Positions 42,179-59,800 of a stretch of 64,000 nucleotides of DNA are shown piece after piece; positions within the stretch are counted from its first letter, which is position 1; every line of letters begins with the position of its first letter. The DNA lies in the NCBI RefSeq assembly GCF_021869535.1, contig NW_026262734.1, forward strand, positions 87,420,001 to 87,484,000, in the 5' to 3' direction. This stretch comes from Mytilus californianus (Eukaryota). A program made the translations under genes and the position numbers. The notes under the pieces are model-generated. The model ran no database searches. It was not told where the DNA came from and worked only from the letters and a program-made list of their open reading frames with translations.

Positions 42179-42744
42179 CTATCCGCTTTATTTGTAATCT
42201 GCAAGTGTGATAAACAAATGGCTTCAGTTTACACTGTTACATACTATGCAAAATGACAAAGATATAATGTGAAATAGCATTTTCTGTTTGAAGTCTTCAA
42301 TCAAATACAGTATATTATATAGGTCACTAGCTTTTGATATTGTGTCTGCTTAGACTCTTTCCTTTAATCAAGAAATGGCGCTTTTGATAATGTTTCTTTT
42401 TTATGACCGGTATAAGATAGTGAAATTTGTAGTAGATGAAGTTGTGGTCAAGTCAACATGAAACATAGCACACATCCATGTTCACTCTGATAGGAACTTT
42501 CAATGATTATGACAAATCATGGTTTTGATCCACATTTGCGGTTCTTTGCATATATATATATATATATATAGAAATATAAAGGTGTAAGCAGGGCCTGTTG
42601 TCTTTTGGACACATATCCTTGTTTCATATTGGCTTGGAAAAAAAAGTACTAAAAAACATTTCCTTTCATGACATTAAAAAATTGTTTATTGCAATATGAA
42701 AATGATGTTATAATATAAGTTTTTTGTTTTGTCTTGTTTTACAG

Positions 42745-43525
42745 TTACAGACAGTCGCCAGAGCATCCTCATCCAATACCCTTCGAAGACTGTTTAACTG
42801 CAACTAAGTACGTCGTCAATAACGCAAAATCTTTACATGTAGATCCGTCACGTGTAGCTATTTCCGGTGACAGTGCAGGAGGCCACTTATCAGCAGCCGT
42901 TGCTATGGCAATGAAGAAAGAAATCAAAATTTCCGTCCCAATTTACCCTTGTTTACAATTATTTGATCTACAAACACCGTCATATATTGAAAATAAAGAT
43001 TACATTCCAGGAATGCTTACCGATGTGTCCATGTTGACCTATTGGCTAAATTATGGAAATATCAGTTACAACTATATTGATGATATCTTAGCTAACAGAC
43101 ACACGTCTCAAAAACTGAAAGAATCATTGTATGCTAAATATGTTAGTCCAGATTGGTACATGACGGAACATATAAGAACACCAAGTTTACGAAATATGAA
43201 GAAAAAAACAAATTTTGGAAAAACTGAATTATCAGATAAAATACAAGAGACAATTTTAAACCCTGATTTTTCACCTCTGATGGTGCCGGACGCAAAATAC
43301 AAAGACTTGCCGCTTACATATGTGTTAACAGCCGGATATGACGTTTTACGTGATGACGGACTAATCTATTATCAGCGCCTAAAAAAGGCTGGTGCTAAAG
43401 TGCATTTGGCACATTATGCAGATGGTTTCCATGGTATGATTTTCTTTTTTGACGGTCCCATGCCATTTCAAGTAGGAATTCGTGCAATGAATGACCTTGT
43501 GCAATTTTTGAAGAAAAATTTATGA
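42745..43525 (+). CDS. AADAC/NCEH1-like GDXG-family lipase/esterase, exon 5 (catalytic exon)
   Basis: TTTTACAG|T completes the Ser codon. Encodes YRQSPEHP..GDSAG (nucleophile Ser)..GYDVLRDDG (Asp)..DGFHG (His), ending in TGA. AATAAA lies at 43600. The joined CDS from 32661 is 1254 nt, giving 417 aa. Confidence 0.95.
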
Positions 43526-44830: not shown

Positions 44831-46642
44831 CAGGATTTAAGTTATTTTTTGCAACGAAATCCCTGACTTAATAATTTACCAGAATACATAGATTACGTTC
44901 ATTGAAATCCAAAATGTCACTACAGACATGGGCATAGCGAACGAGTTGTGATATATAAACTAGTCAATTTAGTTGCAGACGAACGTTCCTGCCACGTGCA
45001 GGGTTCGTACTCACAACTTTAGTGAAAACAAATGACAGTATTGTGGCTTTCCAGTAGCTGTTGCAACAATTCTAACAAAATTAGCTATGCCAGCTATAGT
45101 GGACAATTTCACCTAAGCAGCCACGAGTGTAGAAACCAAGAAAAAATGGCAACCAAGAGAGGACAGACCAACACCGGATCAAAAGAAAAAATCCCTAAAG
45201 ATTTGTATTGCATGTCCCTCTTTTTGCTTTCTTAAAATTTTTAAAAATAATTCCAACCCGCCATTTATTTATGGAAGCTGTCCAAAGTCAAAGGTTGTCT
45301 TTGCTTATATTTAATTGCAATCGCCTTGTCCTTCCGTCTGTTCGTCAGTACATCTGTTTGTACAACAAATACACGCATTTCTCAGAATATGCTGGACATA
45401 ACATATACTGGATATGATGACTGTCCTAATATTTAGCAGCAGTTCAAGACGGATATGTCGAAACGTGTACAATGGACTTTTCTGGTCTGTGACACACCTA
45501 CTTCGTGTTTTCTGATACGTTGAAGACAACTGAAGGGTATCGATAGCAACACACCACAAGCATTTTTGTTAGTTTTTTTTTTGTGCGTATGTTTATTATT
45601 TGTCCAAATAAAGGTTTTTCTAAAAATGTTTTTTTTTTTCAAAAGTAAAGTCCCGCGTTGAATATTGTTAGTCGAGCGATAGAGATGGACACTCCAGTGC
45701 TAAAGATATAAAGTTGTTCAATGTGTCTTTGGTTGGCGTATTAAGGGTCGATACGGGCGGTAGGGACACAAAAGGGAAAGTTTCCTTTTAAACAAAAATA
45801 ATATATAGATGACTCTCTCGCTATATTTCAAACTCTCTACCCATAACAAAACCTAAAGAGAAACTTATAATGCATTCCAGACATATGTTATAGTTGCGCC
45901 AAATGTATTTCAATTGATTTTTGGCCGTTGCACTCTATAGGGACTGCTAGAAAATTGTGTAGCATGCCAACAAACTAGTTCAACTCCGTCACATTTGTGT
46001 ATGTGTCTATCCCAAGTCAGGAGCCTGTAATTCAGTGTTTGTCGCTGTTTGCTGTATATCATACTTGTCTTTCATTCATTGTTTTGTACATAAATCAGAC
46101 CGTTAATTTTCTCGTTTGATTTCGGGGCCTTTTAAAGCTGAATATGCCGTATGGCTTTTGCGCATTGTTGGAGGCCGTACTGTGACCTATAGTTGTTCAT
46201 TTCTATGTCATTTAGTCTCTTGTGGAGAGTTGTCTCATTGGCAAGCATACCACATCTTCTTATTTTTATAATTAATATGTATTGTACTTGTTTGACATAT
46301 ACATTGTATCTATAAAATATATTTGGTATTGTGATTCCATTTGAAGTGGTAAGGACTAAAAAAAGGGTTGATAATCAAGAATCCTCGTCCTTTGACCTGT
46401 GGTGGACAGTTGTCACACTGCCAATCACATCATATATCCTTAGTGTTATCAATTAACTCCCCCCCCCCCCCCCCACAAAAAAAAAACAACAAAAAAAACC
46501 AACACAAAAAACAACAACAAAAAAACACTCGGAGAAAAACGTTGGCTTAAGTTAGAAAATACATGTACTGCTCAATATACAAATTTATTCAATGAAATAT
46601 TCAAATATTTGGTCAATCGTTGTAATTTCCATCTTTTTGTCA

Positions 46643-46647
46643 CTAAT
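46643..46647 (-). CDS. Secreted Cys/Gly-Tyr-rich peptide A (173 aa), terminal coding exon (5 coding nt)
   Basis: CCTTGCAG|AT TAG completes the Tyr codon T|AT. The 3'UTR aligns with that of paralog B (56838 onward), and AATAAA lies at 46589-46584. Confidence 0.8.
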
Positions 46648-47533
46648 CTGCAAGGAATAAACACATGCTGTTCAAGGAAATCTATTCTTTACAATTCAAT
46701 GATATTTTGTGTACTATATATATATTTGTAAAATATCATTTGAAATAAGACTTTACGTGATACAACTGCTCATTCGTTTAGGAAAGAGGAAACAGGAGAT
46801 GAAATGTTTTTGCGATTTAAGTCTCTTAACTAATGTTATTTCTTTTCAGTCCGTGAACATTCGTGTATAATTTTGCTAAATTTCATTTATGTAAATTAGA
46901 AAGATGAAAAGCCTTAGGAAGTAATCTCTCATATCTTTACATAACTTTTAATTTAGGGAATAATAACTCTTCTATATACTCGCAGTTTTATTTGAAACTG
47001 TGTTTATATCTAGTCATTGCTTATAATCACTTCGAAAATGAAAAAAAAAAAAAAAAAAAAAACAACTAATGAAATCATTAATGTGATATGAAAGTAGTTC
47101 AAAACGTTCTTCCGTCAGTACAATACTAGTAGTAGTATTCCACTGTTTGTACATATTGATAGCTTAATCAATATTTGATTGGTTGAGACTATCCCACGAG
47201 TCAATGAACAAAACTTCATAGTCCCCTCTGAGCATCATATTCTCCTCTGAGCATCATATTCCCCTCTGAAGGTCGGGACTTCATCGTGCGACGTTACGTG
47301 CGATTAACGTACACAACGTTTTGAAGGTTTTTTTTTCGTTTAAAATAGCGATAGTAAAGTCATTATCGTCTTCAAATTTATTCCAGAAGACCAATATGTA
47401 TATTTTGATCCGTACTGTTTATCAATGTTTATGTCGTGTTCAGTTATAGATAAAAGGGGATAAGATAACAAATGTATGTAAATTAATATTTTATATTCAG
47501 GTTGTAAACAAATCATAGGCTGTGGAATACAAC

Positions 47534-47673
47534 TTTCATTTCCCTTGACTTCGGGAGATATGAAGATTTGTCTACCCTCGAAAAATCATATTTCACTCGG
47601 GCAAAGCCCTCATGTGATATGAATCTTCTTGGGTGAACAAATATTCATATCTCCCTCAGGCACGGGAAATAAA
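47534..47673. repeat. Fold-back element in the last intron of peptide A
   Basis: Arms ATTTCCC..GGGAGATATGAA / TTCATATCTCCC..GGGAAAT surround a CGGGCAAAGCCC loop. Confidence 0.72.
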
Positions 47674-47887
47674 TATATAGTATTAGATAAAAACTGTTTG
47701 ATACAGTACAATTGAGAGATGCTCGATGTGCCATTTTCTTAAGATAATGGTGAAAGTTTAGTGACACCAATACATATATCAAAATGCAATAGCATTAATG
47801 ACATTATTATTTATACTTATAGTATAATTTATACATATATTAAGCAATTAAAAAAATAATTATAATCGAGCCGTATTTCATACTTAC

Positions 47888-48320
47888 AAACTCGTTTCTT
47901 TCTGCCATAACTTCTAGATCCATAACCACCAGATCCAAAACCGCCAGACCCATAACCGCTATAACCACCCATACTGCCACCTCCGTAACCACCCATACTG
48001 CCGCCTCCGTAACCTCCGTAACCTCCGTAACCTCCCATACCGCCACCGCCGTAACCACCCATACCGCCTCCGTAACCACCCATACCGCCTCCGTAACCAC
48101 CTATACCGCCACCTCCATAACCACTCATACCATAGCCTCCATAACCACCAATACCGCCACCTCCATAACCCCCTCCTCCCCTGCCGTAGCTACTCCAACT
48201 ACCATAGATTCCCATATTCCAAGGACTTCCTGAATTTCCATATCTCCATCTTTGAACACATTTGTAATATGGGTACCATGGGAGAGGAATGCATTTCTTC
48301 CAAGGTGGACATACTCTAGG
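47888..48320 (-). CDS. Secreted Cys/Gly-Tyr-rich peptide A, main exon
   Basis: TTTAG|CCT..GTT T|GTAAGT, 433 nt, phase 0/1, encoding PRVCPPWKKCIPLPWYPYYKCVQRWRYG..(GGYGGGMGGY)n..SYGRKKRV. Confidence 0.9.
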
Positions 48321-49073
48321 CTAAACAGAAATAATAAATATTTGATGAATTGTAGTCTTAATAAGCTTAAAGAAATTAGAGAAAGCTTATTTGATTTTAA
48401 TCCAATACATTCCAATTAAATTTTCAAGGAGTAGAAATTGTACGTTAATTCTGAACGACCAGTAGTGTTCCGAATGACAACATATTTTTCAAATATATTC
48501 CAATTAAATTTTCAAGGATTATTAATTGTGTGTTAATTCTGAACGACCAGTAGTGTTCCGAATGACAACAAATTTTCAATACATCGTTTGTTTTGTTGTA
48601 TGAGATAAAAGTCCCAAATGAGGTTACCAAAGAATAAATGATTTTGTTTTTATCTTCCCATTATAACAATTTATCTTCCCATTATAACAAAAACAATTAA
48701 AAATAAAAAAGATAAGACTATTATTATAAATTAACATGATCATAAAATTTTTTTTTGACAAAACAAGAACAACAATTTAAACGCGTAAAAGAGAGCCGCA
48801 AGATATTAAACGGATATTCAAACTCATAAGTCGAAAACAATCTGACAATGTCATGGCAAAAGCGAAAAACGACGAAAAGACAAACAACAGTTCACAAATC
48901 ACAACATACAAAACTAAAGACTGAGCAACACGAACCCCACCAAAAACAGGGGTGATCTAAAGTGTTCCAGAAGGGTAAGCAGATCCTGCTCCAAATGTGT
49001 CACCCGTCGTGTTGCTAATGTAAGTAAAAACCCGGTACTAAGTATAATCCAATAGGTCAAATGATAGTACTTA

Positions 49074-49305
49074 GGGAACGACCATTTAACTTCAAAAGGG
49101 GGAGGGAGGAGGGGTTATGGTTTTTCCCTAAAAAAAATATTCTGATCCCCAATTCGATGAAAAAAATGTTGTGGTCAAGCAGATGACAAAAAAAAAATAT
49201 TCTGAATCTAGATTTTCCCCGTACCTTATAGTGTTAAATTTTGAGAAAAAAAAATCTGACTCAGACAAAAATCATAACCCCCCTTGAAGTTAAATGGTTG
49301 CTCCC
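49074..49305. mobile_element. PIF/Harbinger-like MITE (TTA TSD)
   Basis: TTA|GGGAACGACCATTTAACTTCAA..TTGAAGTTAAATGGTTGCTCCC|TTA. Confidence 0.75.
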
Positions 49306-49335
49306 TTAGATAACCATGTATAACATCTATCTTAC

Positions 49336-49361
49336 CCATGAATAGCATCTAGCAGTTGTTT
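49336..49361 (-). CDS. Secreted peptide A, 26-nt microexon
   Basis: TTTCAG|AA ACA ACT GCT AGA TGC TAT TCA TGG|GTAAGA encodes (E)TTARCYSW; 25 of 26 nt are identical to the paralog B microexon. Confidence 0.9.
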
Positions 49362-50560
49362 CTGAAATAATAAGAATAAGTGATATCACATATAAGGCAA
49401 TGGGTAACACATACTAAGTTACAAGTTTCTGACACTAGGAGTACGTATACGCTGTAAACATTATTGAATCAATAAATGCTTGGGGTACACGTTAATGAAA
49501 TTATCGAGAGCTTAACATAGTTTTTATATAAGTGTCTACTGTTGAAGACTGTATGTTGCACTTACTGTCGATAAACTATCAACAAATGAAATTATCGAGA
49601 GCTTAACATAGTTTTTATATTAGTGTCTACTGTTGAAGACTGTATGCTGCACTTACTGTCGATAAACTATCAACAAATGAAAGACTTTTACTAACACAGA
49701 AATACATGCTCTCTTGCAAGGTGGGTTTCATTATTAAAAACAACATATGTGACATATTGTGTTTGCTCATTTGTGAGCTGATTTGAGCCCCTTAATAATA
49801 GTTCATTGCCTACTTGAAGGGACAAAGTGGATACAAATTTTGTATCATGTTTATATTTTATGGGACAGTTTTCCTGAAATGACAGTTTTTTCTCCAAACT
49901 TCCATAATGATATCATGCTTTAATAAAAGCGATATACATAGCAAGTTCGTTGTCTGACTCAGCTAGGCAAGACCCTTCCTATTGTAAGTCGAACCTGATA
50001 TATTACAATATAAATATATGTAAAATCCCGCTTATTGTTTCGTCCTATTCCCGTATCCCGCTTTTCATTGTAATAATAACGCTTGTAATTCCACTGTCCC
50101 CCGACCTCGTTTCCCGTTTTCACGTATACTAATTTGACTTTCACGTGTCACGCTTACAAAAAATCGACCAAGCCCGTTTCACACTTAAACAAAAAGAGAC
50201 CCACTTCTTATAGGGAACGTTTTTTTCAGAATTATCACATTTCTGTATTTATGTAATTTGTTTAATAGGCCAACATTTTCTATTTGTAGCTTAAACGTAA
50301 TTATCTTTGAAACTCATGAGATCGGACACACACAAGAAGCATCCATAACCATTTGTTTTAAAGCTTGGGGTTCGACTTTGTCTAAGACCTTACCCGTGAC
50401 TCGAAGCGATTCTGTAAGGGAGATGTAGATTTATTTGGATACTAAGCCCCTCTTGTCAAAAATACATGAAAATAATGCTATCATTTTTCACTTCATCCAG
50501 AGTTGTGCAATAGGATTCAAAAGCATTTGATACTTTGCTTAGACATGGTTGAAATCATAC

Positions 50561-50618
50561 CTTGTATTGCTATTCCAAACAAGAAAATGCAGACTAAGAG
50601 GCAAGTCATAGGCTTCAT
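50561..50618 (-). CDS. Secreted peptide A, signal-peptide exon
   Basis: TTTTAG|ACAACC ATG..CAA G|GTATGA encodes MKPMTCLLVCIFLFGIAIQ. Confidence 0.9.
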
Positions 50619-52206
50619 GGTTGTCTAAAACAAAGATTTAAATTATTCATATGCTGATTGGTAAAATGGGTAAAATTAATAAAATAATGACCTCTGTGCG
50701 TACGAAAATATTTTTCTTATTTTTTAATGATATAAAACAATCACTAGTTACCTCAGTGTTTTAGTGGGGTTCGTGTTGCTCAGTTTATCAGTTGTAAGTG
50801 TTCTGTGTTTAATTTTGTAGACTGTTCATTATCGTTTCGCCTTCTTTGTTTTTAGCAATGTTATAGTCTGTTTTTTTTTATTAGAAACACTTATTAAGGA
50901 TTTTTATCAGAAAGACTCAAACACTAACATTTGAAAGCCAAGTATGAAAATTTAATTGTGGATGTAACACGTCTCCTAATTGGCTGAAAGTTGTTTGTCT
51001 ATCAGTTCATAATTTTGTCATGTGACCGTGACGTCATCAACGGTTTTTCATGATTTACTCCTTAAAAATGGAATTTAGAATTAAATTATAACTAGTGACT
51101 TTTTTTTTCTGTCTATTTGAAATATCCTCAAAAATGTGGTGCATACTTGTTAAAACTTATTCAGTGAGCACCGCATTTTAAGGTTATTTCTTCACAGTCA
51201 TTCCTTAAATAATTGAATAAGCGATTTTTAATAATTTCGAAATTTATCAATGTGGAATTTCAGAAAAGTTTGTTATTATTCATGTGAACACCGAAACACT
51301 CACTTACTACTGAGGTAATGATTTCATCGGGAACCAGACGTCTAACATCAGCTCTAAGTCGAGTTAGAGCTTGGCATCGAAAGTAAATTAAATTAAAATT
51401 AACTTGGTGTTCGACTTTAAAGTCGATTTAAAATTTTAAGTTGAATTTCGAATTGAAAATACAAGGTAAAATTCAAGTTTAAGATAAAATACAATATCAA
51501 AATAAGAAGATTTGGTATGATTGCCAATGAGACTATTCTCCACCAGCAAGATATTAATAAACTGACATATGTTAATGTTAAATCAGTATAATCTGCGTCA
51601 AATAAAAATCGACCTTATGCAAATAAATATCAATATATCTGTTAACCTATTTCGGGTTGAAAAAACCTCCATGCAAAGTCTATAACTGCTTGAAAATTCA
51701 GTTAATATCAGAACCCTACAAAACAGACCACCATTCATCTCTTATTTCATATTTGAAGGTTCGAAAATCAAGCAAAGTCTTACACATGTACATGAATACG
51801 TTCACTTGCGTAAGGTCGATTTCTATCCGATGCGGCTCATATGTTGTCGACGGAAATATGATATACAAGTCCCTCATTAATCGACACTATTATCCAAATT
51901 ACAAAGCGAAATTTATTGAGGTAGTCAATCAGTGTTTTATGCGTAATCATTAGTTTGAACTAAATTGTCTTCACATAGAAACTGTTTCATAAGAAATTTC
52001 CAAGAAAGATAAAAGGTATTTTCAAGATATTATTAGCTCATGTATATAGAGCATATATATAATTCTTGCTTATCGTTTAACAATGCTTTTATTTCTGTTT
52101 CTTCCAATCAAAATGTTCTGCCACCCCGCTAATAAAAGCTAGTGCAAACCCTTTGTAGTTTTCATCTTTAACGTTATATTTATTTCTAAAAACTATTATT
52201 TCTTAC

Positions 52207-52263
52207 CTTTGATGCAACCTTGATACGGGAATGTAATTATCTAATCTTGCACTCGTATTTATA
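52207..52263 (-). promoter_or_regulatory. TATA box (52263-52256) and short non-coding first exon of peptide A
   Basis: Minus strand reads TATAAATACGAGT..TTACATTCCCGTATCAAGGTTGCATCAAAG|GTAAGA, homologous to the paralog B promoter. Confidence 0.8.
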
Positions 52264-52650
52264 ATACAGCAGCGTGTTTTGAAACGTGAATCAGAATTGT
52301 TTTTAATTTCATACTTTTTGACTTTATTTGTGTTTGTCTTGTTCAACAATCAAAGTACATTAAACATACAATGCTATAAAGTAGAGAAAAATGAAATGCT
52401 TTGTTGTTAACTCATTTTTACTATTATTCAAAACATATGTAAAGTACAAAAATTCTACGTCCTGTCAGTAATAAACAACAAAATTACAAATGTTCAAAAC
52501 AAAAATCGACTTATAAACCATAGAGTGATCTATCAATATATAAAAACCATATTTTCCTGGATGTCAAACTGCTCATCATTTCAGTGACAAAACCACATTA
52601 ACAAATTGCGGTTATATTGGTCAGCAACGCTTCAGAACTCGTTGCAATAC

Positions 52651-52707
52651 TATAAATACGAGTTGAATATTCAATATTTACATTCCATAATCAAGGTTGC
52701 TAAACAG
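52651..52707 (+). promoter_or_regulatory. TATA box (52651-52658) and short non-coding first exon of peptide B
   Basis: TATAAATACGAGT..TTACATTCCATAATCAAGGTTGCTAAACAG|GTAAGA. Confidence 0.8.
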
Positions 52708-53483
52708 GTAAGACACAATAGGTTTAAAAATATAAAAAAATATATCGTTGTAAACCAGCGATTTTAGCAAAAGCTTTTATAAGATGGTCAAGAAAAAGAG
52801 GCATACATTCTCTGCACGAAGGGAAAGGTAATAAAAGCATGGATTTTTTATGTAATACTAAGATTAATTAAGGCAACAGTTATTCAACGATGTTCCGAAA
52901 TATCCTTTTAATGTTTCCTTGGAATGGATTGTAAAAAGTTAGTTGTACGAGAAGTAACAGTTATTAATAAAATCCATAAAATCAAATAAAGTACGTCGGA
53001 AAATATTCTAAAGGTGTAAACTAAGGACAAACATAAAACACTGATTTACTCCCTTTATAAAGTTCTCTTTGTAATTTGGCGATTGATGTGGCAATTATTA
53101 TATCATAATCGCAATTGACAAGTAGCATATGCATCTTTCTATTCTTAAGGTATTTTGCTTTACATCAATGGTTCAAATCATTATTAATCAATTTAATGTA
53201 AAAGTTTTACCATGTATATTGACCAAAAATTAAGTCACTGTGTTGATACTTAAAGAAGCGTATTGTATGTACATAATTTTATATCGAACTGCTGCCTTCA
53301 CATCTTCCAATATACCAAATTTGACACTATTTTATGTTTTTATTACGAAGTTTAACTTGAAGTAACAACTCGAAGTTCAACTTGAAATTTAATTCGAAGT
53401 TAAATGATTATTCTAACTAGATAACCAAGGTTTCTTAAATTCAACTAAATTTCGAAGTGAAAGAGTAATTTGATATTTATATA

Positions 53484-53873
53484 TATCAAGCACTATCCCT
53501 CCCGTTAGGGGTTTAGTATCATACCATCATAAAATATATGAGAAGAACATAACCCGTATTATGCCAACAACTGGTTTTAGAATAAATGTGTTTATTTCCG
53601 ATGCAAAGACCCTATAAGTGAATCAATATTAAAGCCAACATATGCCATCTTTAATGACCTGACAACAGTATCGTAACTATATCCCTTCTTAATAAGTCTG
53701 TTTAAAGGTTTTGTTAGCTTTAGAGGTGAATGCCGACATTTTTGTGCTTTGTAAAGAATATTACCACAAAAGATTGGATGTGAAATACCTGAACGTATCA
53801 GATGTCTGCATGTTGATTTATATTTACGAATGATGTCCTTGTACCGATGATAAAATTTAGTAAATGTTTTGAC
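53484..53873 (-). mobile_element. 5'-truncated Penelope-like retroelement (open RT C-terminus plus short 3' tail)
   Basis: Uninterrupted 93-aa frame 53873-53592: VKTFTKFYHRYKDIIRKY..GISHPIFCGNILYKAQK..NRLIKKGY..LHRK*. Confidence 0.72.
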
Positions 53874-54010
53874 TTGTTTGTGATATCGAAAACCCTGGTG
53901 TAATAATATTTCAGTAATACATATATTTCTTTCGCTAAAATCTAATACGTTGTTACATATACGAGCAAATCATGTATATACATAATTTGTATCTTTCGTT
54001 TTAGCTAACC

Positions 54011-54068
54011 ATGAAACCCATCACTTGTCTCCTCTTCGCCATTTTCCTGTTTGGAATAGCAATACAAG
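54011..54068 (+). CDS. Secreted Cys/Gly-rich peptide B (101 aa), signal-peptide exon
   Basis: TTTTAG|CTAACC ATG..CAA G|GTATGA encodes MKPITCLLFAIFLFGIAIQ. Confidence 0.9.
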
Positions 54069-54499
54069 GTATGATTTCAGCCATGTCTAAGAAAATGTTA
54101 AAATATCCTAAAATTTTATCGTAAAAATCTGACTAATTGAAAAATGAAGATGATAGATAGCATTTTCATTTATTCCTGACAGGAGAGGCTTACCACCTAA
54201 ATTAATTTCACATCTTCTTTTTGAAATCGCCTTTAGTAGAAAAAGTCGAACCAAAAACTTTAAATTGATATTGTTTGTTTTTCCTTATTTTCTGACTTTA
54301 AAGGATACTCACAGTGAAGGTACAAAACGATATTGTTGGTACGTTCACCAAATACATGAATAAATGAAAAGGATAGGTTTACAGGGAACATTGACTATAT
54401 TCACATTGTAATTACTGCTGTTCTTCATATTTACACTCCTATGACATATCACCTGTTACCTCACAAGTATGTAAAAACACAAATCTTATAGCTAAATTT

Positions 54500-54547
54500 C
54501 GTGCGTCTAACACGCTTTTTCTGAATTTACCTTCATCAGGAACACTC
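54500..54547 (-). ncRNA. Degenerate minimal hammerhead-ribozyme motif (PLE type)
   Basis: Minus strand reads GAGTGTTC-CTGATGA-AGGTAAATTCA-GAAA-AAGCGT-GTT-AGACGC. The core is intact and the stems are mismatched. Confidence 0.5.
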
Positions 54548-55089
54548 ATACCAACGTATTGAAAGGCTAAAGACGTATACAATCTTGAATACATGTACAT
54601 GAGGACCTATATGATCAAAAGGAGACATAAAAGGAATAACTCAATCATATACAGGTCAAATTTGTATGAATACTAGTTTCTGAATTCATTTTGTAATGTT
54701 AGAACCGACACATTGACTATCGGGGACTATATATAAATAAGAAGATGTGGTATGAGTACCAATGAGACAACTATCCATCCAAGTAACAATGAGTAAAAAA
54801 TAAACAATTATAGGTCAAAGTACGGCCTTTAACACTGAGCCTTGGCTCAAACCGAACAGCAAGCTATAACGGGCCCCAAAATGACTAGTGTTAAACAATT
54901 CAAACAGGAAAACCAACGGTCTAGCACTCCACTAGATGCAGTATCGACCATATGCTAGAAAATGAGAGAGAGAAAAAACCACACTATATAACTTTGGTAC
55001 GTCAGAAGCTCTTTTAAGGATTCCCCTTACTAGGGCATGCTGATCCACAAAATTTTGAATGCCAATGTGTATAATCCTGTATATATAAG

Positions 55090-55203
55090 CAATAATTGTT
55101 TAGTGTCTTTAAATATCAGCTGTATTTGTACGAGGCTAAGAAACAGGTGTAATGCGAGCTTCAACGTACAATAACTGTAATTAAAGACACTAAACAGTTA
55201 TTG
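55090..55203. repeat. Fold-back element in intron 2 of peptide B
   Basis: CAATAATTGTTTAGTGTCTTTAA / TTAAAGACACTAAACAGTTATTG arms. Confidence 0.72.
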
Positions 55204-55679
55204 TCTTTATCCTGAAATTAATTTTGTACCTTTTTTCCCATCCCAATCGCTGAATTTGTTTTTGAATGAAATCGACATGACTTAAACGCGGACTGCAATG
55301 ATGACCCCAAATTGAACTGTGATGTAAACAATAATTTGACATAACCGTTCGCTCGCAACAGAAACAGGATATCAGGAGACTATAAACGTCTAGTATACGT
55401 TTATCGCCTCGTGTTATCTGTACACCTGTATTAGTATAGTAGACAGGTCGATTGCAGGATAAATACTTGAATACCCGAGGAGCTATATAACCAAAAAGGA
55501 TGTACATGTCATTTGGTTTGATTATGTGTGACGTTTTGTGGCTGTCTCATTGACGTCTTTCACACCTTTTTTTATTGTTGCGATAATGTTTACATAGTCA
55601 TTGCCTGAAACTTATTATTTGTTATCCATTATCTTATATGTGACATTGCTGCTCTTCATTTAATTACTGACTATTTTAG

Positions 55680-55705
55680 GAACAACTGCTAGATGCTATT
55701 CATGG
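55680..55705 (+). CDS. Secreted peptide B, 26-nt microexon
   Basis: TTTTAG|GA ACA ACT GCT AGA TGC TAT TCA TGG|GTAAGA encodes (G)TTARCYSW, phase 1/0. Confidence 0.9.
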
Positions 55706-56141
55706 GTAAGACTGAACTTTTACAATTCTAAATAAGTACTTTTATGTTTGGGGTTTAATTTCAAGCTTTTTTATTTTCATATTTTGTTTTTGTTTTATTC
55801 TTCTAGTATTATTATTTTCCTTTGCTATCTTAAATTTATGGATTTTTTTTAAAGGAATGATAAAAACAAAACCAATACTTCTTCATTTAGGAATTTCATT
55901 AAAAAAAATCGTAATTATTGAATGTAATTATGTTATTAAAGCACAATAGTTATATTTAAACTTGTTCATATCAACTTATACAAAAAAGCAATCCACGATT
56001 TGAAAATCTGTTGTCACTAGTAGTATCCCTTGAAAAGTTTATTGAGATGTATTTGAAAAGTTACTAAACATAAACACTTTTTGATTTCATTTAGACAATT
56101 AAAAATTTCATTCATCGGATCTGTCTTATTTCTTTGTTTAG

Positions 56142-56358
56142 CCTAGAGTATGTCCACCATGGAAGCGATGTATACCAACTCAATGGTACCCATATTACTA
56201 TTGTGCTCAAAGGTGGGGACATTCAGGAGGTCCTTGGAAAGGCGGAAACTATGGTATCTGGGGTAGATACAACAGCGGAGGTTGGGGTAACCGAGGTGGA
56301 GGATGGGGTAGCCGAGGTATCAATTATGATAGAGGATTCGGAAGGAAGAAAGGTGGTT
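56142..56358 (+). CDS. Secreted peptide B, main exon
   Basis: TTTAG|CCT..GGT T|GTAAGT, 217 nt, encoding PRVCPPWKRCIPTQWYPYYYCAQRWGHSGGPWKGGNYGIWGRYNSGGWGNRGGGWGSRGINYDRGFGRKKGG. Confidence 0.9.
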
Positions 56359-56629
56359 GTAAGTATATAATATGGTTAGAACATTTATATTTCTTTGAAT
56401 TTATAATTGCTTAGATATATTATAAATTTCTCAATCAATATAACTACATTTTAATTGTAAGTTGTAAGTTTCTTATAGTCTTCGGTGTCACAAGACGTTT
56501 TTTTGGTATGGAAAAATATGGCACAAAGAGCATTTCTCACGTTTTAAAAACATGTTTCTTCAGATTACGATATTGAGCTGACGGAAATACAGTAGTTTCG
56601 AGAGATTTTAACTGATCAAACACTTTTTT

Positions 56630-56659
56630 TCTTTCTTTCTTTTCTTTCTTTCTTTGTTT

Positions 56660-56699
<40 letters not shown>

Positions 56700-56712
56700 T
56701 TTATCTTTCTTT
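56630..56712 (+). repeat. (TTTC)n microsatellite
   Basis: A TTTC run is directly visible in the last intron of peptide B. Confidence 0.9.
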
Positions 56713-56837
56713 AAAAGAATTAACAGTTGTATAACATAAAGTCCTTTTTTCAGCATGTTCAATGGCAATTTTGTGAAATAACACATAAACACTCATGGTA
56801 TGGATTTGATTTCAACTTCATGCTTTATCATTTGCAG

Positions 56838-56842
56838 ATTAA
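56838..56842 (+). CDS. Secreted peptide B, terminal coding exon (5 coding nt)
   Basis: TTTGCAG|AT TAA completes Tyr-stop. AATAAA lies near 56896 and 56930. Confidence 0.8.
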
Positions 56843-59800
56843 TTATAAAAGATGAAAACTGCGAAGATTGACCAGATAATTGAGAGATTTTATGAAATAA
56901 ATTTGTATTGAACAGTACATGTATTTTCTAATAAATGCCACCGTATTTATTTTATTTGCGCAAGGGACAATTTGAATTTGAAGCTTGAATGTCCTAAATC
57001 GTTATTTGCTTCAATATAGATACATTTTACACTGAAATGAAGATCACTAGATTTAATTGTTGAACTATAATTATTTAAATCTTCAAATATAACTGTGTTT
57101 AGTTTGCTACTGATGTTTTTTTAATTTTGTGACTAATTCGTCATACCGGATGAAAATGTGACTTGACGCAACACAAATTAAAAAAAGTCACGGCCTCAAA
57201 TCAGTTGCTGATGTCAAAGCTAATTACAAATTACGAATTAATATAAATTCACATTCACAAATATTATTTAGAAACAAGCAACAAGTGCTTATATCAATCT
57301 TTCTCTAATTTTCATGCTATTTTCATATGTCTCGATCGGTGTAAGAAAAAAAATTCTTATCTCTGTTCTCGGCAAATGATTGGTCGAAATTTCAATTATG
57401 ACGTCAATTTTCTTGATTTCTACTGAATTTCCTATTGTAAGGTCATGAAAAAAGGCGACCATGCCTGATGACGTCACTTATAAAGAACACAACTTTCTAC
57501 AAATCTTTGAAGAGGAAGGATAAACTTTTTTCGATATCGTCTTACAATAATTAAGGAAACAGATTCCTACACTATACGTTGTAGCTCGTGTATTACGTTA
57601 TTTCTCCACTCTCAACGTTTAAATTTTTAATATTCAAAAAGCTCGACAAACCTCGCGTTTTAAATTTTAAGATTTAGCTGTCTCGAGTTAAGAAAAATTG
57701 TACCACACTTGATGCAGTGGTGGAATTAATCTTTCTGATTTAGAGTTAATCCCTCAGTTTTTGTTTGTTACCGTGATTTGTTTATGGCTTTATGCAATTT
57801 GAACAACATTATATTACTGCCTATATGTAACCAAATGCGAGATATTTAAGAAAGAAAATCAGTTGTGATTTCCAAGTTAAAAATCATTTCAGAAAGATAA
57901 CGAAAGCTTCTGGTAAATAAATATTTGTGGGAGTTCTAGATCTTGTTGCTGTATTATATTTCACATCTCAGTCATTTATATGTTTTAATTTGTATTGACT
58001 AATTCGCCTTTTCAGAATCTAAAGGACTATGGGTAATCTCATTGTTCGTACACCAAAATGAAAATAACGTTGCGTCATTGGTTCAATTTCCATTGTTTAG
58101 AACGTTTTAAACAAATCAAAACGTTTTGGTGTACGCTTTTGAAAATATAACCCAGAATGCATTATATTCTGAAACGGCGAATTGATTTCTATATTCAATC
58201 AAAACATATCCAGGGTTTGACATTTTTGCTCATATCTATGAAATCAGTGTTATGTCGGGTACACACCTGGTGAGTTTTATCAAATCATACATTATCATTA
58301 AGGTCACAGCTGCTTTTTATGCCAGTTAACACATAAGATTTTTTAAACACATTTTTTTAAATGAGATTCACTCTGTACTTCGTACAGGTTATAAAAGTAA
58401 CAATATTTGTGTATAAAAGAATTTTCGAAATCCAGAACTAGTTTTAAATGAACATTTTACAGATACAAAGAATAAACAATTGGAGAACTGTCATGTTTCT
58501 GCAGAGCCGTGTGGTCTCAACAGTTAAGGTCATTAATGTCTAGATCTGCAAATTAACACTAAGCGCTCAGGATGTAAACTCTAGTGCTGAAGATGTAACT
58601 CTAGCGCTTATATAGAGTTTATACACCCAGCGAGGGACTCTATATGCCTATCAGATGATTTTACATCTTCGGCGTTTGAGTTTAAATTTTCAGCTCTACA
58701 GTCAACAGGAGCCGTTTACAGTTCTACGTGCATTTACTATTGCAATTGTTTTATAACGAAAAAGACTGTGATTTAAATTCTTGTAAAGTTTGTTTCAGAA
58801 TATTTATTTTCCCCCAGTAGAATAAGACCATGTGAAAAAAATACGGACGATGTATGCCGTAGTTAGAACTTCGAGTAGAGATAGTAGCTTACATGACCCA
58901 AATATTTCTCATAACTTTAGGAATCTTTTCTTATTTGAATTTTATATTTGAGACTTCTTTGTCAAATGACTTATGAATTACATTTTCCTAACTATTCCGA
59001 AGACTCTTATTAGAGTAATCCGGTACCAAAATTACCCAAATGTTTTACTTATTGAAAAATTACAGCCATGCGTAGGAACTATTTTGTTTATAAGATGTAC
59101 TACTGGTACTTTCTTGTATGTTCTGACGGATTGTTAGTTCACGAGGGTACAACTAGCTCAGTAGCCAGTGCTTCGGTACTGGCATGGAAATACGATATTG
59201 TGTAATTAGATTTGCTGTTACAACGTTTGGAAATCATTTTAAATTAAAAATACATCTCCCTTATACAAAGCTCTAATTCCTTGCCCAGATTTGGCTATAC
59301 ATTTTATCCTTTTTGGTTTCTAGCTCTTCATTTTTAAAATAAGCTTTGGATTTAAAGAAATGTCGGACTCAAGTATCACCAAAGAGACGCATCTGGTGCA
59401 GAAACATTAGTAACGTTAATGTTATTCTTTTTGATCGGGCCTTATTTAGAGGTTCTATACCTACCAATTAAAACAATCTCTATTGCTAAAAATTTTAGTA
59501 TGTAACTTAAACCTAACATTGCAGAACTGTATGATGTAATGAAGTCTTTTAGTAATGTGATTATGGTCAAATAGCAAATACATGTATGTCGGCCAGATTC
59601 AATCTTTGATTCTGACTCGAATTTCAAAGTTAAATAGTGAGTGAACAAAGTTGTGAACAAAGGGTTACACTATGTTGAAATATTATCAGTGAATTTATTA
59701 TCTCATCTGTAACATGTTGTACCGATATTATTTTCGTTTTCCAAATCCCCAAGTCATGTTCTTCAACTGTGAAGTGTGGGATATTTATATTTATTATAGA

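What the first reader, a model, noticed from the sequence alone, without database searches (positions are those of the whole stretch)
46560..56950. Head-to-head pair of unannotated secreted Cys-knot-like/Gly-Tyr-rich peptide genes
Two paralogous genes face away from each other and share an identical exon plan: non-coding exon, 58-nt signal exon, 26-nt microexon, main exon, and 5-nt Tyr-stop exon. A (minus, 173 aa): MKPMTCLLVCIFLFGIAIQETTA-RCYSWPRVCPPWKKCIPLPWYPYYKCVQRWRYG..(GGYGGGM)n..GRKKRVY. B (plus, 101 aa): MKPITCLLFAIFLFGIAIQGTTA-RCYSWPRVCPPWKRCIPTQWYPYYYCAQRWGHSGGPWKGGNYG..GRKKGGY. All splice phases join without frameshift in both genes (seen). The ORF track reports most of this region in wrong frames, so automated annotation could miss it. 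I do not recognise the family. Established parallels are the Gly/Tyr-rich bivalve shell proteins (shematrins end in RKKKY-type motifs; KRMPs combine a Cys/Trp basic domain with a Gly/Tyr tail), G/R/Y/W/N-rich mussel foot proteins (mfp-3), and Gly-rich cationic antimicrobial peptides. The function (shell, periostracum, byssus or host defence) is open; this is inference.
Basis: partly seen in the sequence, partly recalled or inferred. Interest (0 to 1): 0.9.

Follow-up and report, generated by a model that had tools for sequence, protein, structure and literature searches.

The report
Mussel-only secreted Gly/Tyr-rich protein gene pair
Two back-to-back California mussel genes encode small secreted, basic proteins with a conserved four-cysteine head and a glycine/tyrosine-rich tail. 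They are real, already in RefSeq as "uncharacterized", found only in Mytilus, and built like pearl-oyster shell-matrix KRMP proteins, but their function is untested.

Summary
The window is Mytilus californianus (GCA_021869535.1). Gene B (+, 101 aa) is identical to RefSeq XP_052073245.1 (LOC127711290). Gene A (-, 173 aa) matches an annotated 173-aa product with exactly the same CDS span. So "unannotated" is wrong; both are only uncharacterised.

Both genes use GT-AG introns and the same plan: non-coding exon, 58-nt signal exon, 26-nt microexon, main exon, 5-nt Tyr-stop exon. They share a mirrored TATA promoter block. The head-to-head pair, beside an AADAC-like esterase gene, is conserved in M. 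coruscus and M. trossulus.

The mature proteins have 4 Cys (C-x6-C-x5-C-x10-C), which is not a cystine knot. The Trp/Tyr/Pro-rich basic head is under purifying selection. The tail is a length-variable Gly-rich repeat ending in G-(R/K)2-4-x0-2-Y.

A profile search of 1.84 billion proteins found relatives only in Mytilus. Pfam and fold searches found nothing.

The architecture matches Pinctada KRMPs (signal, basic Trp-rich head, Gly/Tyr tail, basic-Tyr end), but without detectable homology. My best reading, at about 0.5, is cross-linkable structural matrix proteins of mantle secretions. Rivals are byssal proteins and Gly-rich antimicrobial peptides. Gene A also resembles the never-sequenced periostracin in composition; this is speculative. 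I saw no expression data.

The parts
52255..52262 (-). Gene A TATA box (TATAAATA on the minus strand)
   Evidence: It lies in the identical 14-nt core CTATAAATACGAGT shared by both arms of the mirrored promoter block.
52207..52232 (-). Gene A non-coding exon 1. The donor position (52207) is seen; the transcription start near 52232 is inferred from TATA spacing.
   Evidence: A conserved segment ends in AAAG|GTAAGA. The block is conserved in M. coruscus (94%) and M. trossulus (81%). I saw no transcript.
50561..50624 (-). Gene A exon 2: 6-nt leader plus the 58-nt signal-peptide exon (ATG at 50618)
   Evidence: Acceptor TTTTAG, donor GTATGA. It encodes MKPMTCLLVCIFLFGIAIQ. It pairs with the B exon in inverted repeat I1.
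49336..49361 (-). Gene A 26-nt microexon (E-TTARCYSW; carries the signal cleavage site and the first Cys)
   Evidence: TTTCAG|...|GTAAGA. It pairs with the B microexon in I6. It is conserved in M. coruscus (26 nt) and M. trossulus (29 nt, in frame).
47888..48320 (-). Gene A main exon, 433 nt: rest of the Cys/Trp/Tyr/Pro head, the (GGYGGGMG)n tail and GRKKRV
   Evidence: The tail is a 24-nt tandem repeat of about 9 copies at 47962-48170.
46560..46647 (-). Gene A last exon: 5 coding nt (completes Tyr, then TAG), the 3' UTR, and AATAAA at 46584-46589
   Evidence: TTGCAG|ATTAG. The annotated 173-aa product ends at 46643. The same junction is conserved in M. coruscus and M. trossulus.
52651..52658 (+). 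Gene B TATA box
52682..52707 (+). Gene B non-coding exon 1. The donor position (52707) is seen; the start is inferred.
   Evidence: AACAG|GTAAGA. It lies in the only intergenic block that still aligns with M. trossulus (window 52184-52846, 77%).
54005..54068 (+). Gene B exon 2: 6-nt leader plus the 58-nt signal exon (ATG at 54011)
   Evidence: It matches XP_052073245.1.
55680..55705 (+). Gene B 26-nt microexon (G-TTARCYSW)
   Evidence: The RefSeq protein contains exactly this join.
56142..56358 (+). Gene B main exon, 217 nt: head, Gly/Trp/Arg/Asn/Tyr tail, GRKKGG
56838..56925 (+). Gene B last exon: 5 coding nt (Tyr, then TAA) and the 3' UTR, with AATAAA at 56896-56901 and 56930-35
   Evidence: The final Tyr of XP_052073245.1 needs this junction. 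It mirrors the A 3' end in I9.

Best explanation
This is a conserved, divergently transcribed pair of five-exon genes in Mytilus californianus: LOC127711290 (gene B) and its neighbour (gene A). The two genes share a bidirectional promoter region of about 400 bp that carries two TATA boxes.

Each gene encodes a pre-protein with four parts:
- a 23-residue signal peptide;
- a basic head of about 30 residues, rich in Trp, Tyr and Pro, with four invariant cysteines (C-x6-C-x5-C-x10-C), probably a beta-hairpin held by two disulfides;
- a disordered Gly-rich repetitive tail, which is (GGYGGGMG)n in A and shorter and Gly/Trp/Arg/Asn/Tyr-rich in B;
- a basic end, G-(R/K)2-4-x0-2-Tyr, whose last codon is split onto a tiny final exon.

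The family is restricted to Mytilus and arose by an inverted duplication that predates the split of M. californianus/coruscus from the M. edulis complex.

Inferred function: these are secreted structural 'linker/framework' proteins of a tanned extracellular material, most likely mantle secretions (periostracum or the shell organic framework). In this model the conserved head docks onto chitin or acidic matrix. The Gly/Tyr tail is cross-linked after tyrosinase turns Tyr into DOPA/quinone. This is what has been proposed for Pinctada KRMPs, whose architecture the family copies without detectable sequence homology.
For: Gene models (shown):
- The splice plan and translations were rebuilt from the window.
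- B is identical to XP_052073245.1.
- A 173-aa annotated product has exactly A's CDS span.
- All five main exons examined have lengths of 1 mod 3 (217, 433, 163, 529, 397 nt) despite many repeat indels. The M. trossulus microexon differs by +3 nt.

Conservation:
- The pair and its AADAC-like neighbour are syntenic in M. coruscus and M. trossulus.
- Against M. trossulus, the alignable blocks coincide with the exons, their immediate flanks and the shared promoter.
- The head evolves under purifying selection, with omega 0.07-0.34 between orthologues and 0.20-0.24 between A and B.
- Twenty-five columns of the 7-sequence alignment are invariant, including three of the cysteines. The first cysteine lies in the microexon and is present in every sequence that covers it.

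Secretion and chemistry:
- The signal has an n-region MKP, a 15-residue hydrophobic core and a TTA|R cleavage site.
- Mature A is 15.0 kDa, pI 9.65, Gly 43%, Tyr 15%, with no Asp or Glu. Mature B is 9.0 kDa, pI 10.1.
- AF2 on the head alone gives pLDDT 67-80 with a hairpin at residues 13-17/24-28 and a disordered tail.

Architecture parallel (literature):
- KRMPs are about 10 kDa and consist of a signal, a Lys/Trp basic domain, a Gly/Tyr domain and an RKYKY/RPKKY/RRKY end (PMC3896809). KRMP-3 is 101 aa.
- The KRMP Gly/Tyr region binds chitin, and the protein sits in the insoluble prismatic matrix (PMC4498902).
- A Pinctada paralogue swaps the Gly/Tyr tail for G(R/W)RR(N/Y/W) repeats, just as B differs from A (PMC3120837).
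- Freer et al. reported KRMP-like Trp-rich lead domains and RnKmY ends in M. edulis mantle transcripts (PMC3896809).
Against: - I saw no expression, proteomic or functional data, so tissue and material are pure inference.
- There is no detectable homology to KRMP or shematrin. The N-domain profile over 1.84e9 proteins finds only Mytilus, and the tail search finds nothing at E<=1e-3.
- The head is Arg/Trp/Tyr/Pro-rich with Cys, not Lys-rich.
- The B tail has few Tyr-Gly repeats. It looks as much like an adhesive mfp-3-type or Trp/Arg antimicrobial sequence as a framework protein.
- An aromatic-Gly-(K/R)n end could instead be a convertase/amidation signal, as in secreted peptides.
- I could not check that the Freer et al. 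isotigs are these genes, because no supplement is held.
Confidence: 0.5

Rival explanations
1. Host-defence peptides. The precursors would be cleaved after the basic cluster, trimmed and C-terminally amidated. This would release cationic Gly/Trp/Arg-rich peptides with a disulfide-stapled hairpin head that act on microbial membranes. Known parallels, recalled from my own knowledge, are the Gly-rich acanthoscurrin and armadillidin and the Trp/Arg-rich peptides.
For: - Mature B is small (60-78 aa), has pI about 10.1, and is 10% Trp and 12% Arg.
- An aromatic-Gly-(K/R)2-4 end is present in 7 of 8 sequences, which fits the convertase + CPE + PAM processing described for mussel peptides (PMC5577615).
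- The head is predicted to be a two-disulfide beta-hairpin.
- A 5'-UTR-only first exon with an intron just before the ATG also occurs in myticalin genes (PMC5577615).
- The family is taxon-restricted, like most mussel AMPs.
Against: - The head and signal are strongly conserved between species, and the genes are single-copy and syntenic. Mussel AMP families are multigenic and hypervariable in the mature region (PMC5577615).
- There is no anionic propeptide.
- A carries a tail of about 110-150 residues of GGY/GGM repeats, which is typical of structural scleroproteins.
- One sequence (P0004) has Ser, not Gly, before the basic cluster.
- In a tail with 43% Gly, a Gly at that position is not surprising.
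Confidence: 0.2
2. Byssal (foot-gland) proteins. B would act as an interfacial or primer protein like mfp-3. A would act as a Gly/Tyr-rich matrix or cuticle component whose Tyr is converted to DOPA.
For: - The B tail (GPWKGGNYGIWGRYNSGGWGNRGGGWGSRG...) has the Gly/Asn/Tyr/Arg/Trp bias of mfp-3. That resemblance is recalled from my own knowledge and was not tested here.
- Both proteins are basic and Tyr-rich, and their Cys could serve redox or cross-link roles.
- The family is confined to Mytilus, a strongly byssate genus.
Against: - I could fetch no mfp sequence, so there was no comparison.
- Known mfp-3 has no Cys-rich head (my knowledge).
- None of the held foot or byssus papers contains these motifs or accessions.
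- The full architecture (basic Trp head + Gly/Tyr tail + basic-Tyr end) is the KRMP one, and KRMPs are mantle proteins.
Confidence: 0.15
3. Another secreted role unrelated to materials or defence, for example a signalling peptide precursor or a gamete/egg-coat component. In that case the Gly-rich tail would be a spacer.
For: - There is a dibasic/furin-like site (RKKR in A) and a possible amidation signal.
- The conserved small disulfide domain could be a ligand.
Against: - Neuropeptide precursors rarely carry 100+ residues of GGY repeats.
- The tail length varies freely between species (138-182 mature residues in A), which suits a material better than a ligand.
- Nothing positive points to this reading.
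Confidence: 0.1

Closest known systems
Lysine-rich matrix proteins (KRMPs) of pearl oysters (Pinctada)
   Same: Both are small secreted basic proteins with the same module order: signal peptide, short basic Trp-containing head right after the signal, Gly/Tyr-rich cross-linking tail of variable length, and a short basic motif ending in Tyr (KRMP: RKYKY/RPKKY/RRKY; here GRKKRVY/GRKKGGY/GKRRGY). KRMP-3 and gene B are both 101 aa. A Pinctada paralogue with a G(R/W)RR(N/Y/W) tail parallels B against A (PMC3896809, PMC4498902, PMC3120837).
   Different: There is no detectable sequence homology. The head here is Arg/Trp/Tyr/Pro-rich with four invariant Cys rather than Lys-rich. There is a five-exon plan with a microexon and a split terminal Tyr; I could not obtain the KRMP gene structure. 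The family is restricted to Mytilus, whereas KRMPs are reported as pearl-oyster novelties (PMC5400390). Tissue and localisation are unknown.
Shematrins (Pinctada Gly-rich shell framework proteins)
   Same: The gene A tail is a Gly-rich repeat with Tyr and a hydrophobic residue (GGYGGGM/I), like the shematrin XGnX repeats. The basic-Tyr C-terminus resembles RKKKY/RRKKY (PMC3896809).
   Different: Shematrins lack the Cys/Trp head. There is no homology hit. Shematrins are reported only in pearl oysters (PMC5400390).
Periostracin of Mytilus edulis (Waite et al. 1979, as cited in PMC3821031)
   Same: Periostracin is a basic protein of 20 kDa with 55% Gly, 10% Tyr and 2.2% DOPA, from the same genus, and its sequence was never determined (as of 2013, PMC3821031). 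Mature A-type proteins are basic (pI 9.4-9.65), 14-17.4 kDa, 40-47% Gly and 12-16% Tyr.
   Different: Gly is 8-15 points lower and the mass is 3-6 kDa lower. I had no full composition table or peptide sequence to compare. Other Gly/Tyr-rich Mytilus proteins exist, for example the GGGYGGYGI isotig in PMC3896809.
Myticalins and other mussel antimicrobial peptide precursors
   Same: Both are secreted, cationic and taxon-restricted. Both have a 5'-UTR-only first exon and a dibasic site near the C-terminus (PMC5577615).
   Different: The signal peptide differs (myticalin consensus MKGxxLLLLTI...). Myticalins have no Cys, a 35-75-aa anionic C-terminal extension, three exons and a hypervariable mature region. 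None of these is seen here.

Membership tests
KRMP (lysine-rich matrix protein) | N-terminal signal peptide, small size (about 10 kDa) | tested here: met
   There is a 23-aa signal with a hydrophobic core (mean Kyte-Doolittle hydropathy 2.4). Mature B is 9.0 kDa and mature A is 15.0 kDa. No SignalP run was available.
KRMP (lysine-rich matrix protein) | Short Lys/Trp-rich basic domain immediately after the signal (PMC3896809) | tested here: inconclusive
   The head is basic (pI 9.4-9.7) and Trp-rich (4 of 34), but it has only 2-3 Lys, more Arg, and 4 Cys.
KRMP (lysine-rich matrix protein) | [quoted passage not shown] | tested here: met
   Mature gene A is 43% Gly and 15% Tyr, with GGY repeats in its tail. 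The B tail is Gly/Trp/Arg/Asn/Tyr-rich instead.
KRMP (lysine-rich matrix protein) | Short basic C-terminal motif ending in Tyr (RKYKY, RPKKY, RRKY) | tested here: inconclusive
   The ends GRKKRVY, GRKKGGY, GKRRGY, GKKGGY and RKKSVY are a similar kind of motif, but 1-2 non-basic residues precede the Tyr.
KRMP (lysine-rich matrix protein) | Detectable sequence homology to Pinctada KRMPs | tested here: not met
   The head profile searched against 1.84e9 representatives found only the two Mytilus clusters plus two spurious satellite translations. The tail search gave nothing at E<=1e-3. I could not fetch KRMP sequences for a direct pairwise test.
KRMP (lysine-rich matrix protein) | Mantle-edge expression and presence in the insoluble prismatic matrix | not testable with these tools
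   There is no expression or proteome data for these loci.
Shematrin | Protein dominated by Gly-rich XGnX repeats with an RKKKY-type end, and homology to Pinctada shematrins | tested here: not met
   The repeat style and the end are similar for A. There is no homology hit, and an extra Cys/Trp head is present.
Cystine knot (knottin / growth-factor type) | Six cysteines forming three disulfides with a threaded ring | tested here: not met
   There are only four Cys in every member, spaced C-x6-C-x5-C-x10-C. AF2 gives a simple hairpin. Foldseek against PDB gave no hit at E<=0.001.
Myticalin | Conserved signal MKGxxLLLLTIxxALCMIxECEG, Cys-free cationic core, KR site followed by a 35-75-aa anionic extension, three exons | tested here: not met
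   The features in PMC5577615 were compared with the models. The signal differs, there are 4 Cys, there is no anionic extension, and there are five exons.
Periostracin (M. edulis) | Basic, about 20 kDa, 55% Gly, about 12% Tyr+DOPA | tested here: inconclusive
   A-type proteins have pI 9.4-9.65, 14.1-17.4 kDa, Gly 40-47% and Tyr 12-16%. The reference values come only from PMC3821031.
Periostracin (M. edulis) | Extractable from periostracum / periostracal groove; DOPA-containing | not testable with these tools
   This needs proteomics or Edman sequencing.
mfp-3 (mussel foot protein 3) | Sequence or composition match to known mfp-3 variants; foot phenol-gland expression | not tested
   No mfp-3 sequence could be retrieved with these tools. 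The resemblance of the B tail is recalled from memory only.

The most novel reading that the evidence does not exclude
Gene A and its orthologues encode periostracin. Periostracin is the basic, Gly-rich, DOPA-bearing precursor of mussel periostracum that was purified in 1979 and, as of a 2013 paper, had not been sequenced. Gene B would then be a shorter partner from the same bidirectional promoter. That would give the first molecular handle on how the periostracum is assembled and tanned.
Probability: 0.12. Interest if true: 0.6.

Novelty: new variant of a known kind. Interest (0 to 1): 0.35.

Why it matters
If the structural reading is right, mussels and pearl oysters arrived at the same modular design from unrelated sequences: a basic aromatic head, a Gly/Tyr cross-linking tail and a basic-Tyr end. 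That would be a clean case of convergent (or unrecognisably diverged) evolution in shell-secretome proteins.

The conserved 30-residue two-disulfide head would be a compact, synthesisable module to test for chitin or matrix binding.

The locus is also a tidy example of a bidirectional promoter driving two paralogues with different tails.

If gene A proved to be periostracin, a question more than 40 years old would become testable.

Otherwise this is one more lineage-restricted secreted low-complexity protein family, which is a common class.

Tried and rejected
- Pfam on both main exons gave only a sub-threshold 8-residue FIMAC match.
- ESM-Atlas look-alikes gave a 0.79 hit to an unnamed mollusc cluster for B and nothing for A.
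- In the profile search, the two extra hits P0007 and P0008 are translated tandem satellites, not relatives.
- A word-index search with the Gly/Tyr tail, meant to pull in named KRMP or shematrin proteins, scored 8000 candidates and none passed. So I could make no direct alignment to KRMPs.
- Full-length AF2 gave pLDDT 49 and is unusable. The head-only model is moderate, and Foldseek against PDB found nothing significant.
- Exact-protein look-ups found only genome records and no transcript contigs, so I obtained no tissue information.
- Literature searches for the accessions, LOC number and six sequence motifs all returned zero papers.
- McDougall et al. 2013, which covers KRMP/shematrin evolution, is not held.
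- The Freer et al. supplement is not held.
- I rejected the cystine-knot reading (4 Cys), the myticalin reading (different on every defining feature), and a link between the neighbouring 'HGGG' array and Gly-rich proteins. That array belongs to the AADAC-like esterase gene.

Full report
**Source and observation**

The window is AT-rich eukaryotic DNA of about 32% GC. An exact protein match places it on Mytilus californianus GCA_021869535.1, scaffold JAKFGE010000008.1, near 87.47 Mb.

- Gene B (+): CDS 54011-54068, 55680-55705, 56142-56358, 56838-42. It encodes 101 aa.
- Gene A (-): CDS 50618-50561, 49361-49336, 48320-47888, 46647-43. It encodes 173 aa.

All introns are GT...AG with good polypyrimidine tracts. 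The exon phases are 58 + 26 nt = 28 codons, then a main exon of length 1 mod 3, then 2 nt plus a stop. A tblastn of both proteins against the whole window finds only these two copies.

**Independent confirmation, and the 'unannotated' claim**

A search with the B main exon returned XP_052073245.1, 'uncharacterized protein LOC127711290 [Mytilus californianus]'. It is 101 aa and identical to the spliced model from Met to the final Tyr.

Fetching that locus with 10-kb flanks shows a second called gene of 173 aa on the opposite strand at L005 2633-6608. This is window 46643-50618, exactly the start and stop of gene A.

A 26-nt microexon and a 5-nt terminal coding piece are not something gene finders predict ab initio. 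I therefore infer that the annotation rests on transcript alignments, though I did not see them.

B-type orthologues are annotated in three more species:
- M. trossulus (XP_063448512.1);
- M. edulis (XP_071178176.1);
- M. galloprovincialis (VDI25076.1, 83 aa, with the same start and the same split terminal Tyr).

An A-type orthologue is mis-modelled in M. coruscus (CAC5394788.1, which reads into introns) and in an ENA contig. So the genes are real and already catalogued, but nobody has named or studied them. Searches of the paper library for the LOC number, six accessions and six peptide motifs all returned nothing.

**Anatomy of the locus**

Inverted-repeat detection pairs every element of A with its counterpart in B:
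- promoter and exon 1: 52184-52287 with 52627-52730;
- signal exons: 50498-50634 with 53995-54131;
- microexons plus flanks;
- main-exon starts;
- 3' ends: 46535-46577 with 56906-56948.

Aligning the two promoter arms shows three shared features:
- an identical core, CTATAAATACGAGT;
- a conserved segment (ACATTCC...ATCAAGGTTGC) about 25-30 nt downstream;
- a consensus donor (AG|GTAAGA) at 52207 in A and 52707 in B.

An acceptor, TTTTAG, lies 6 nt before each ATG. The transcription starts themselves remain inferred.

**Conservation across species**

I fetched the M. coruscus (L003) and M. trossulus (L004) loci. Both carry the same head-to-head pair next to the same AADAC-like alpha/beta-hydrolase gene. 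The inverted duplication therefore predates these species' divergence.

All five exon types of both genes are found by blastn in both species. I rebuilt three orthologue models:
- M. trossulus A: 206 aa, with a 29-nt microexon that adds one codon in frame;
- M. coruscus A: 161 aa;
- M. trossulus B: 83 aa.

The five main exons are 217, 433, 163, 529 and 397 nt. All are 1 mod 3 despite extensive repeat-number change, which is a strong sign of coding constraint.

Against the closely related M. coruscus the whole locus aligns at about 85%. Against M. trossulus the surviving blocks coincide with the exons, their immediate flanks and the promoter block 52184-52846.

The 30-codon head has omega 0.07 (B) and 0.20 (A) between M. 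californianus and M. trossulus. Between A and B, omega is 0.20-0.24 at dS of about 0.5. The substitution counts behind these ratios are small.

**The proteins**

The signal peptide has an MKP n-region, a 15-residue hydrophobic core and a TTA|R cleavage site. It is followed by RCYSWPRVCPPWK(K/R)CIP..WYPYY.C.QRW.

There are four cysteines with spacing C-x6-C-x5-C-x10-C, in every sequence that covers them. Four cysteines allow two disulfides, not a cystine knot.

AlphaFold on the full protein is unusable, with pLDDT 49. On the head alone it gives pLDDT 67-80 and a beta-hairpin (residues 13-17 and 24-28) that places Cys15 and Cys26 on opposite strands. Everything after residue 31 is disordered. 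Foldseek against PDB finds nothing significant.

| Mature protein | Length | Mass | pI | Composition |
|---|---|---|---|---|
| A (M. californianus) | 150 aa | 15.0 kDa | 9.65 | Gly 43%, Tyr 15%, Ser 9%, Met 5%, no acidic residues |
| B (M. californianus) | 78 aa | 9.0 kDa | 10.1 | Gly 24%, Arg 12%, Tyr 12%, Trp 10% |

The A tail is a 24-nt tandem repeat of about 9 copies encoding GGYGGGMG.

All members end in a basic cluster followed by 0-2 residues and Tyr: GRKKRVY, GRKKGGY, GKRRGY, GKKGGY or RKKSVY.

**Relatives**

Pfam gives nothing. A HMMER profile of signal plus head, run against 1.84 billion representative proteins, recovers only the two Mytilus clusters. Two further hits are translated satellites. 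The Gly/Tyr tail alone gives no hit at E<=1e-3, and Atlas look-alikes are uninformative. The family is therefore Mytilus-restricted at the level these tools can see.

**What it most resembles**

The literature defines KRMPs of pearl oysters as small (about 10 kDa) secreted proteins. They have a short Lys/Trp-rich basic domain directly after the signal, a Gly/Tyr-rich domain of variable length, and an RKYKY/RPKKY/RRKY end (PMC3896809).

KRMP-3 is 101 aa. Its Gly/Tyr region binds chitin, its basic region affects CaCO3 crystals, and the native protein sits in the insoluble prismatic matrix (PMC4498902). KRMPs are proposed to link acidic proteins to the hydrophobic framework, with the Gly/Tyr domain cross-linked. 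A Pinctada paralogue keeps the head but replaces the tail with G(R/W)RR(N/Y/W) repeats (PMC3120837).

The mussel pair copies this design module for module, including the A/B tail dichotomy. Freer et al. noted KRMP-like Trp-rich lead domains and RnKmY ends in M. edulis mantle transcripts (PMC3896809). I could not verify that those isotigs are these genes, because no supplement is held.

Because homology was tested and not found, I do not file the family as KRMP. It works like one on paper only. KRMPs and shematrins are themselves described as pearl-oyster novelties, and such repetitive low-complexity secretome proteins are common lineage-specific inventions (PMC5400390).

**Mechanism and rivals**

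My best reading, at about 0.5, is that these are secreted structural linker or framework proteins of a tanned mantle secretion. The conserved disulfide-stapled aromatic/basic head would act as the docking module. The Gly/Tyr tail would be the tyrosinase-dependent cross-linking module.

Shown: gene structure, secretion signal, conservation, composition and disorder. Inferred: tissue, binding partner and cross-linking.

The rivals are:
- Gly-rich cationic antimicrobial peptides (0.2). In favour are the B paralogue's size, charge and Trp/Arg content, and a possible convertase/amidation end. Against are the strong conservation, single-copy synteny and the long GGY tail of A, in contrast to the hypervariable multigene mussel AMPs (PMC5577615).
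- Byssal proteins (0.15). The B tail recalls mfp-3, but this resemblance is from memory and untested.
- Other secreted roles (0.1).

**Most novel reading not excluded**

Periostracin of M. edulis is described as basic and water-insoluble, 20 kDa, with 55% Gly, 10% Tyr and 2.2% DOPA. A 2013 paper states that it had not then been sequenced (PMC3821031).

A-type proteins are basic, 14-17.4 kDa, 40-47% Gly and 12-16% Tyr. The M. trossulus orthologue has 12.1% Tyr and 46.7% Gly. The match is suggestive but loose, and other Gly/Tyr-rich mussel proteins exist. I put this reading at about 0.12.

**Verdict**

The genes are annotated but uncharacterised, and they represent a new mussel-specific variant of a known kind of secreted matrix-type protein. 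Interest is moderate at 0.35. Expression and proteomic data would decide the function quickly.

Noticed in passing
L004:9956-10045 (M. trossulus gene A signal exon) compared with window 53998-54088 and 50541-50686: The M. trossulus A-type signal exon (MQPITCLFFAIFLFGIAIQ) is closer to the B-type signal exon than to A of M. californianus: 88% to window B against 77% to window A. This suggests gene conversion between the head-to-head paralogues in the M. edulis-complex lineage.
   Followed up: partly
L003:6700-8700 (M. coruscus, intron 1 of gene A); single copy at window 50709-50784: A unit of about 76-83 nt that occurs once in the M. californianus intron is expanded into a tandem satellite of about 24 copies in M. 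coruscus.
   Followed up: no
window 46160-46270, 51495-51546, 54730-54840 (also several sites in L003 and L004): Copies of a short dispersed repeat containing ...GGCAAGCATACCACATCTTCTT..., probably a MITE/SINE-type element, lie in both orientations around and inside the two genes.
   Followed up: no
window 42734-43525 (+), with upstream exons near 32-41 kb: The neighbouring gene is an AADAC-like alpha/beta hydrolase (Pfam Abhydrolase_3, E 4e-37). It is convergent with gene A and syntenic in M. coruscus and M. trossulus.
   Followed up: partly
window 48404-48584 and 49494-49682; 56623-56712; 46460-46530: There are intronic tandem duplications (88-nt and 91-nt units, about 2 copies each) in gene A, a (CTTT)22 microsatellite in the last intron of gene B, and a poly-C / A-rich tract just beyond the gene A 3' end.
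   Followed up: no
P0002 (M. trossulus) and P0006 (M. edulis) N-termini; L004:7803-8722: The RefSeq B-type models in M. trossulus and M. edulis carry 21-25 extra N-terminal residues that read through sequence upstream of the true ATG. The called M. trossulus A-type gene is a 142-aa model truncated at the 5' end, but it uses the correct terminal 5-nt exon. The microexon plan is error-prone for annotation pipelines.
   Followed up: partly
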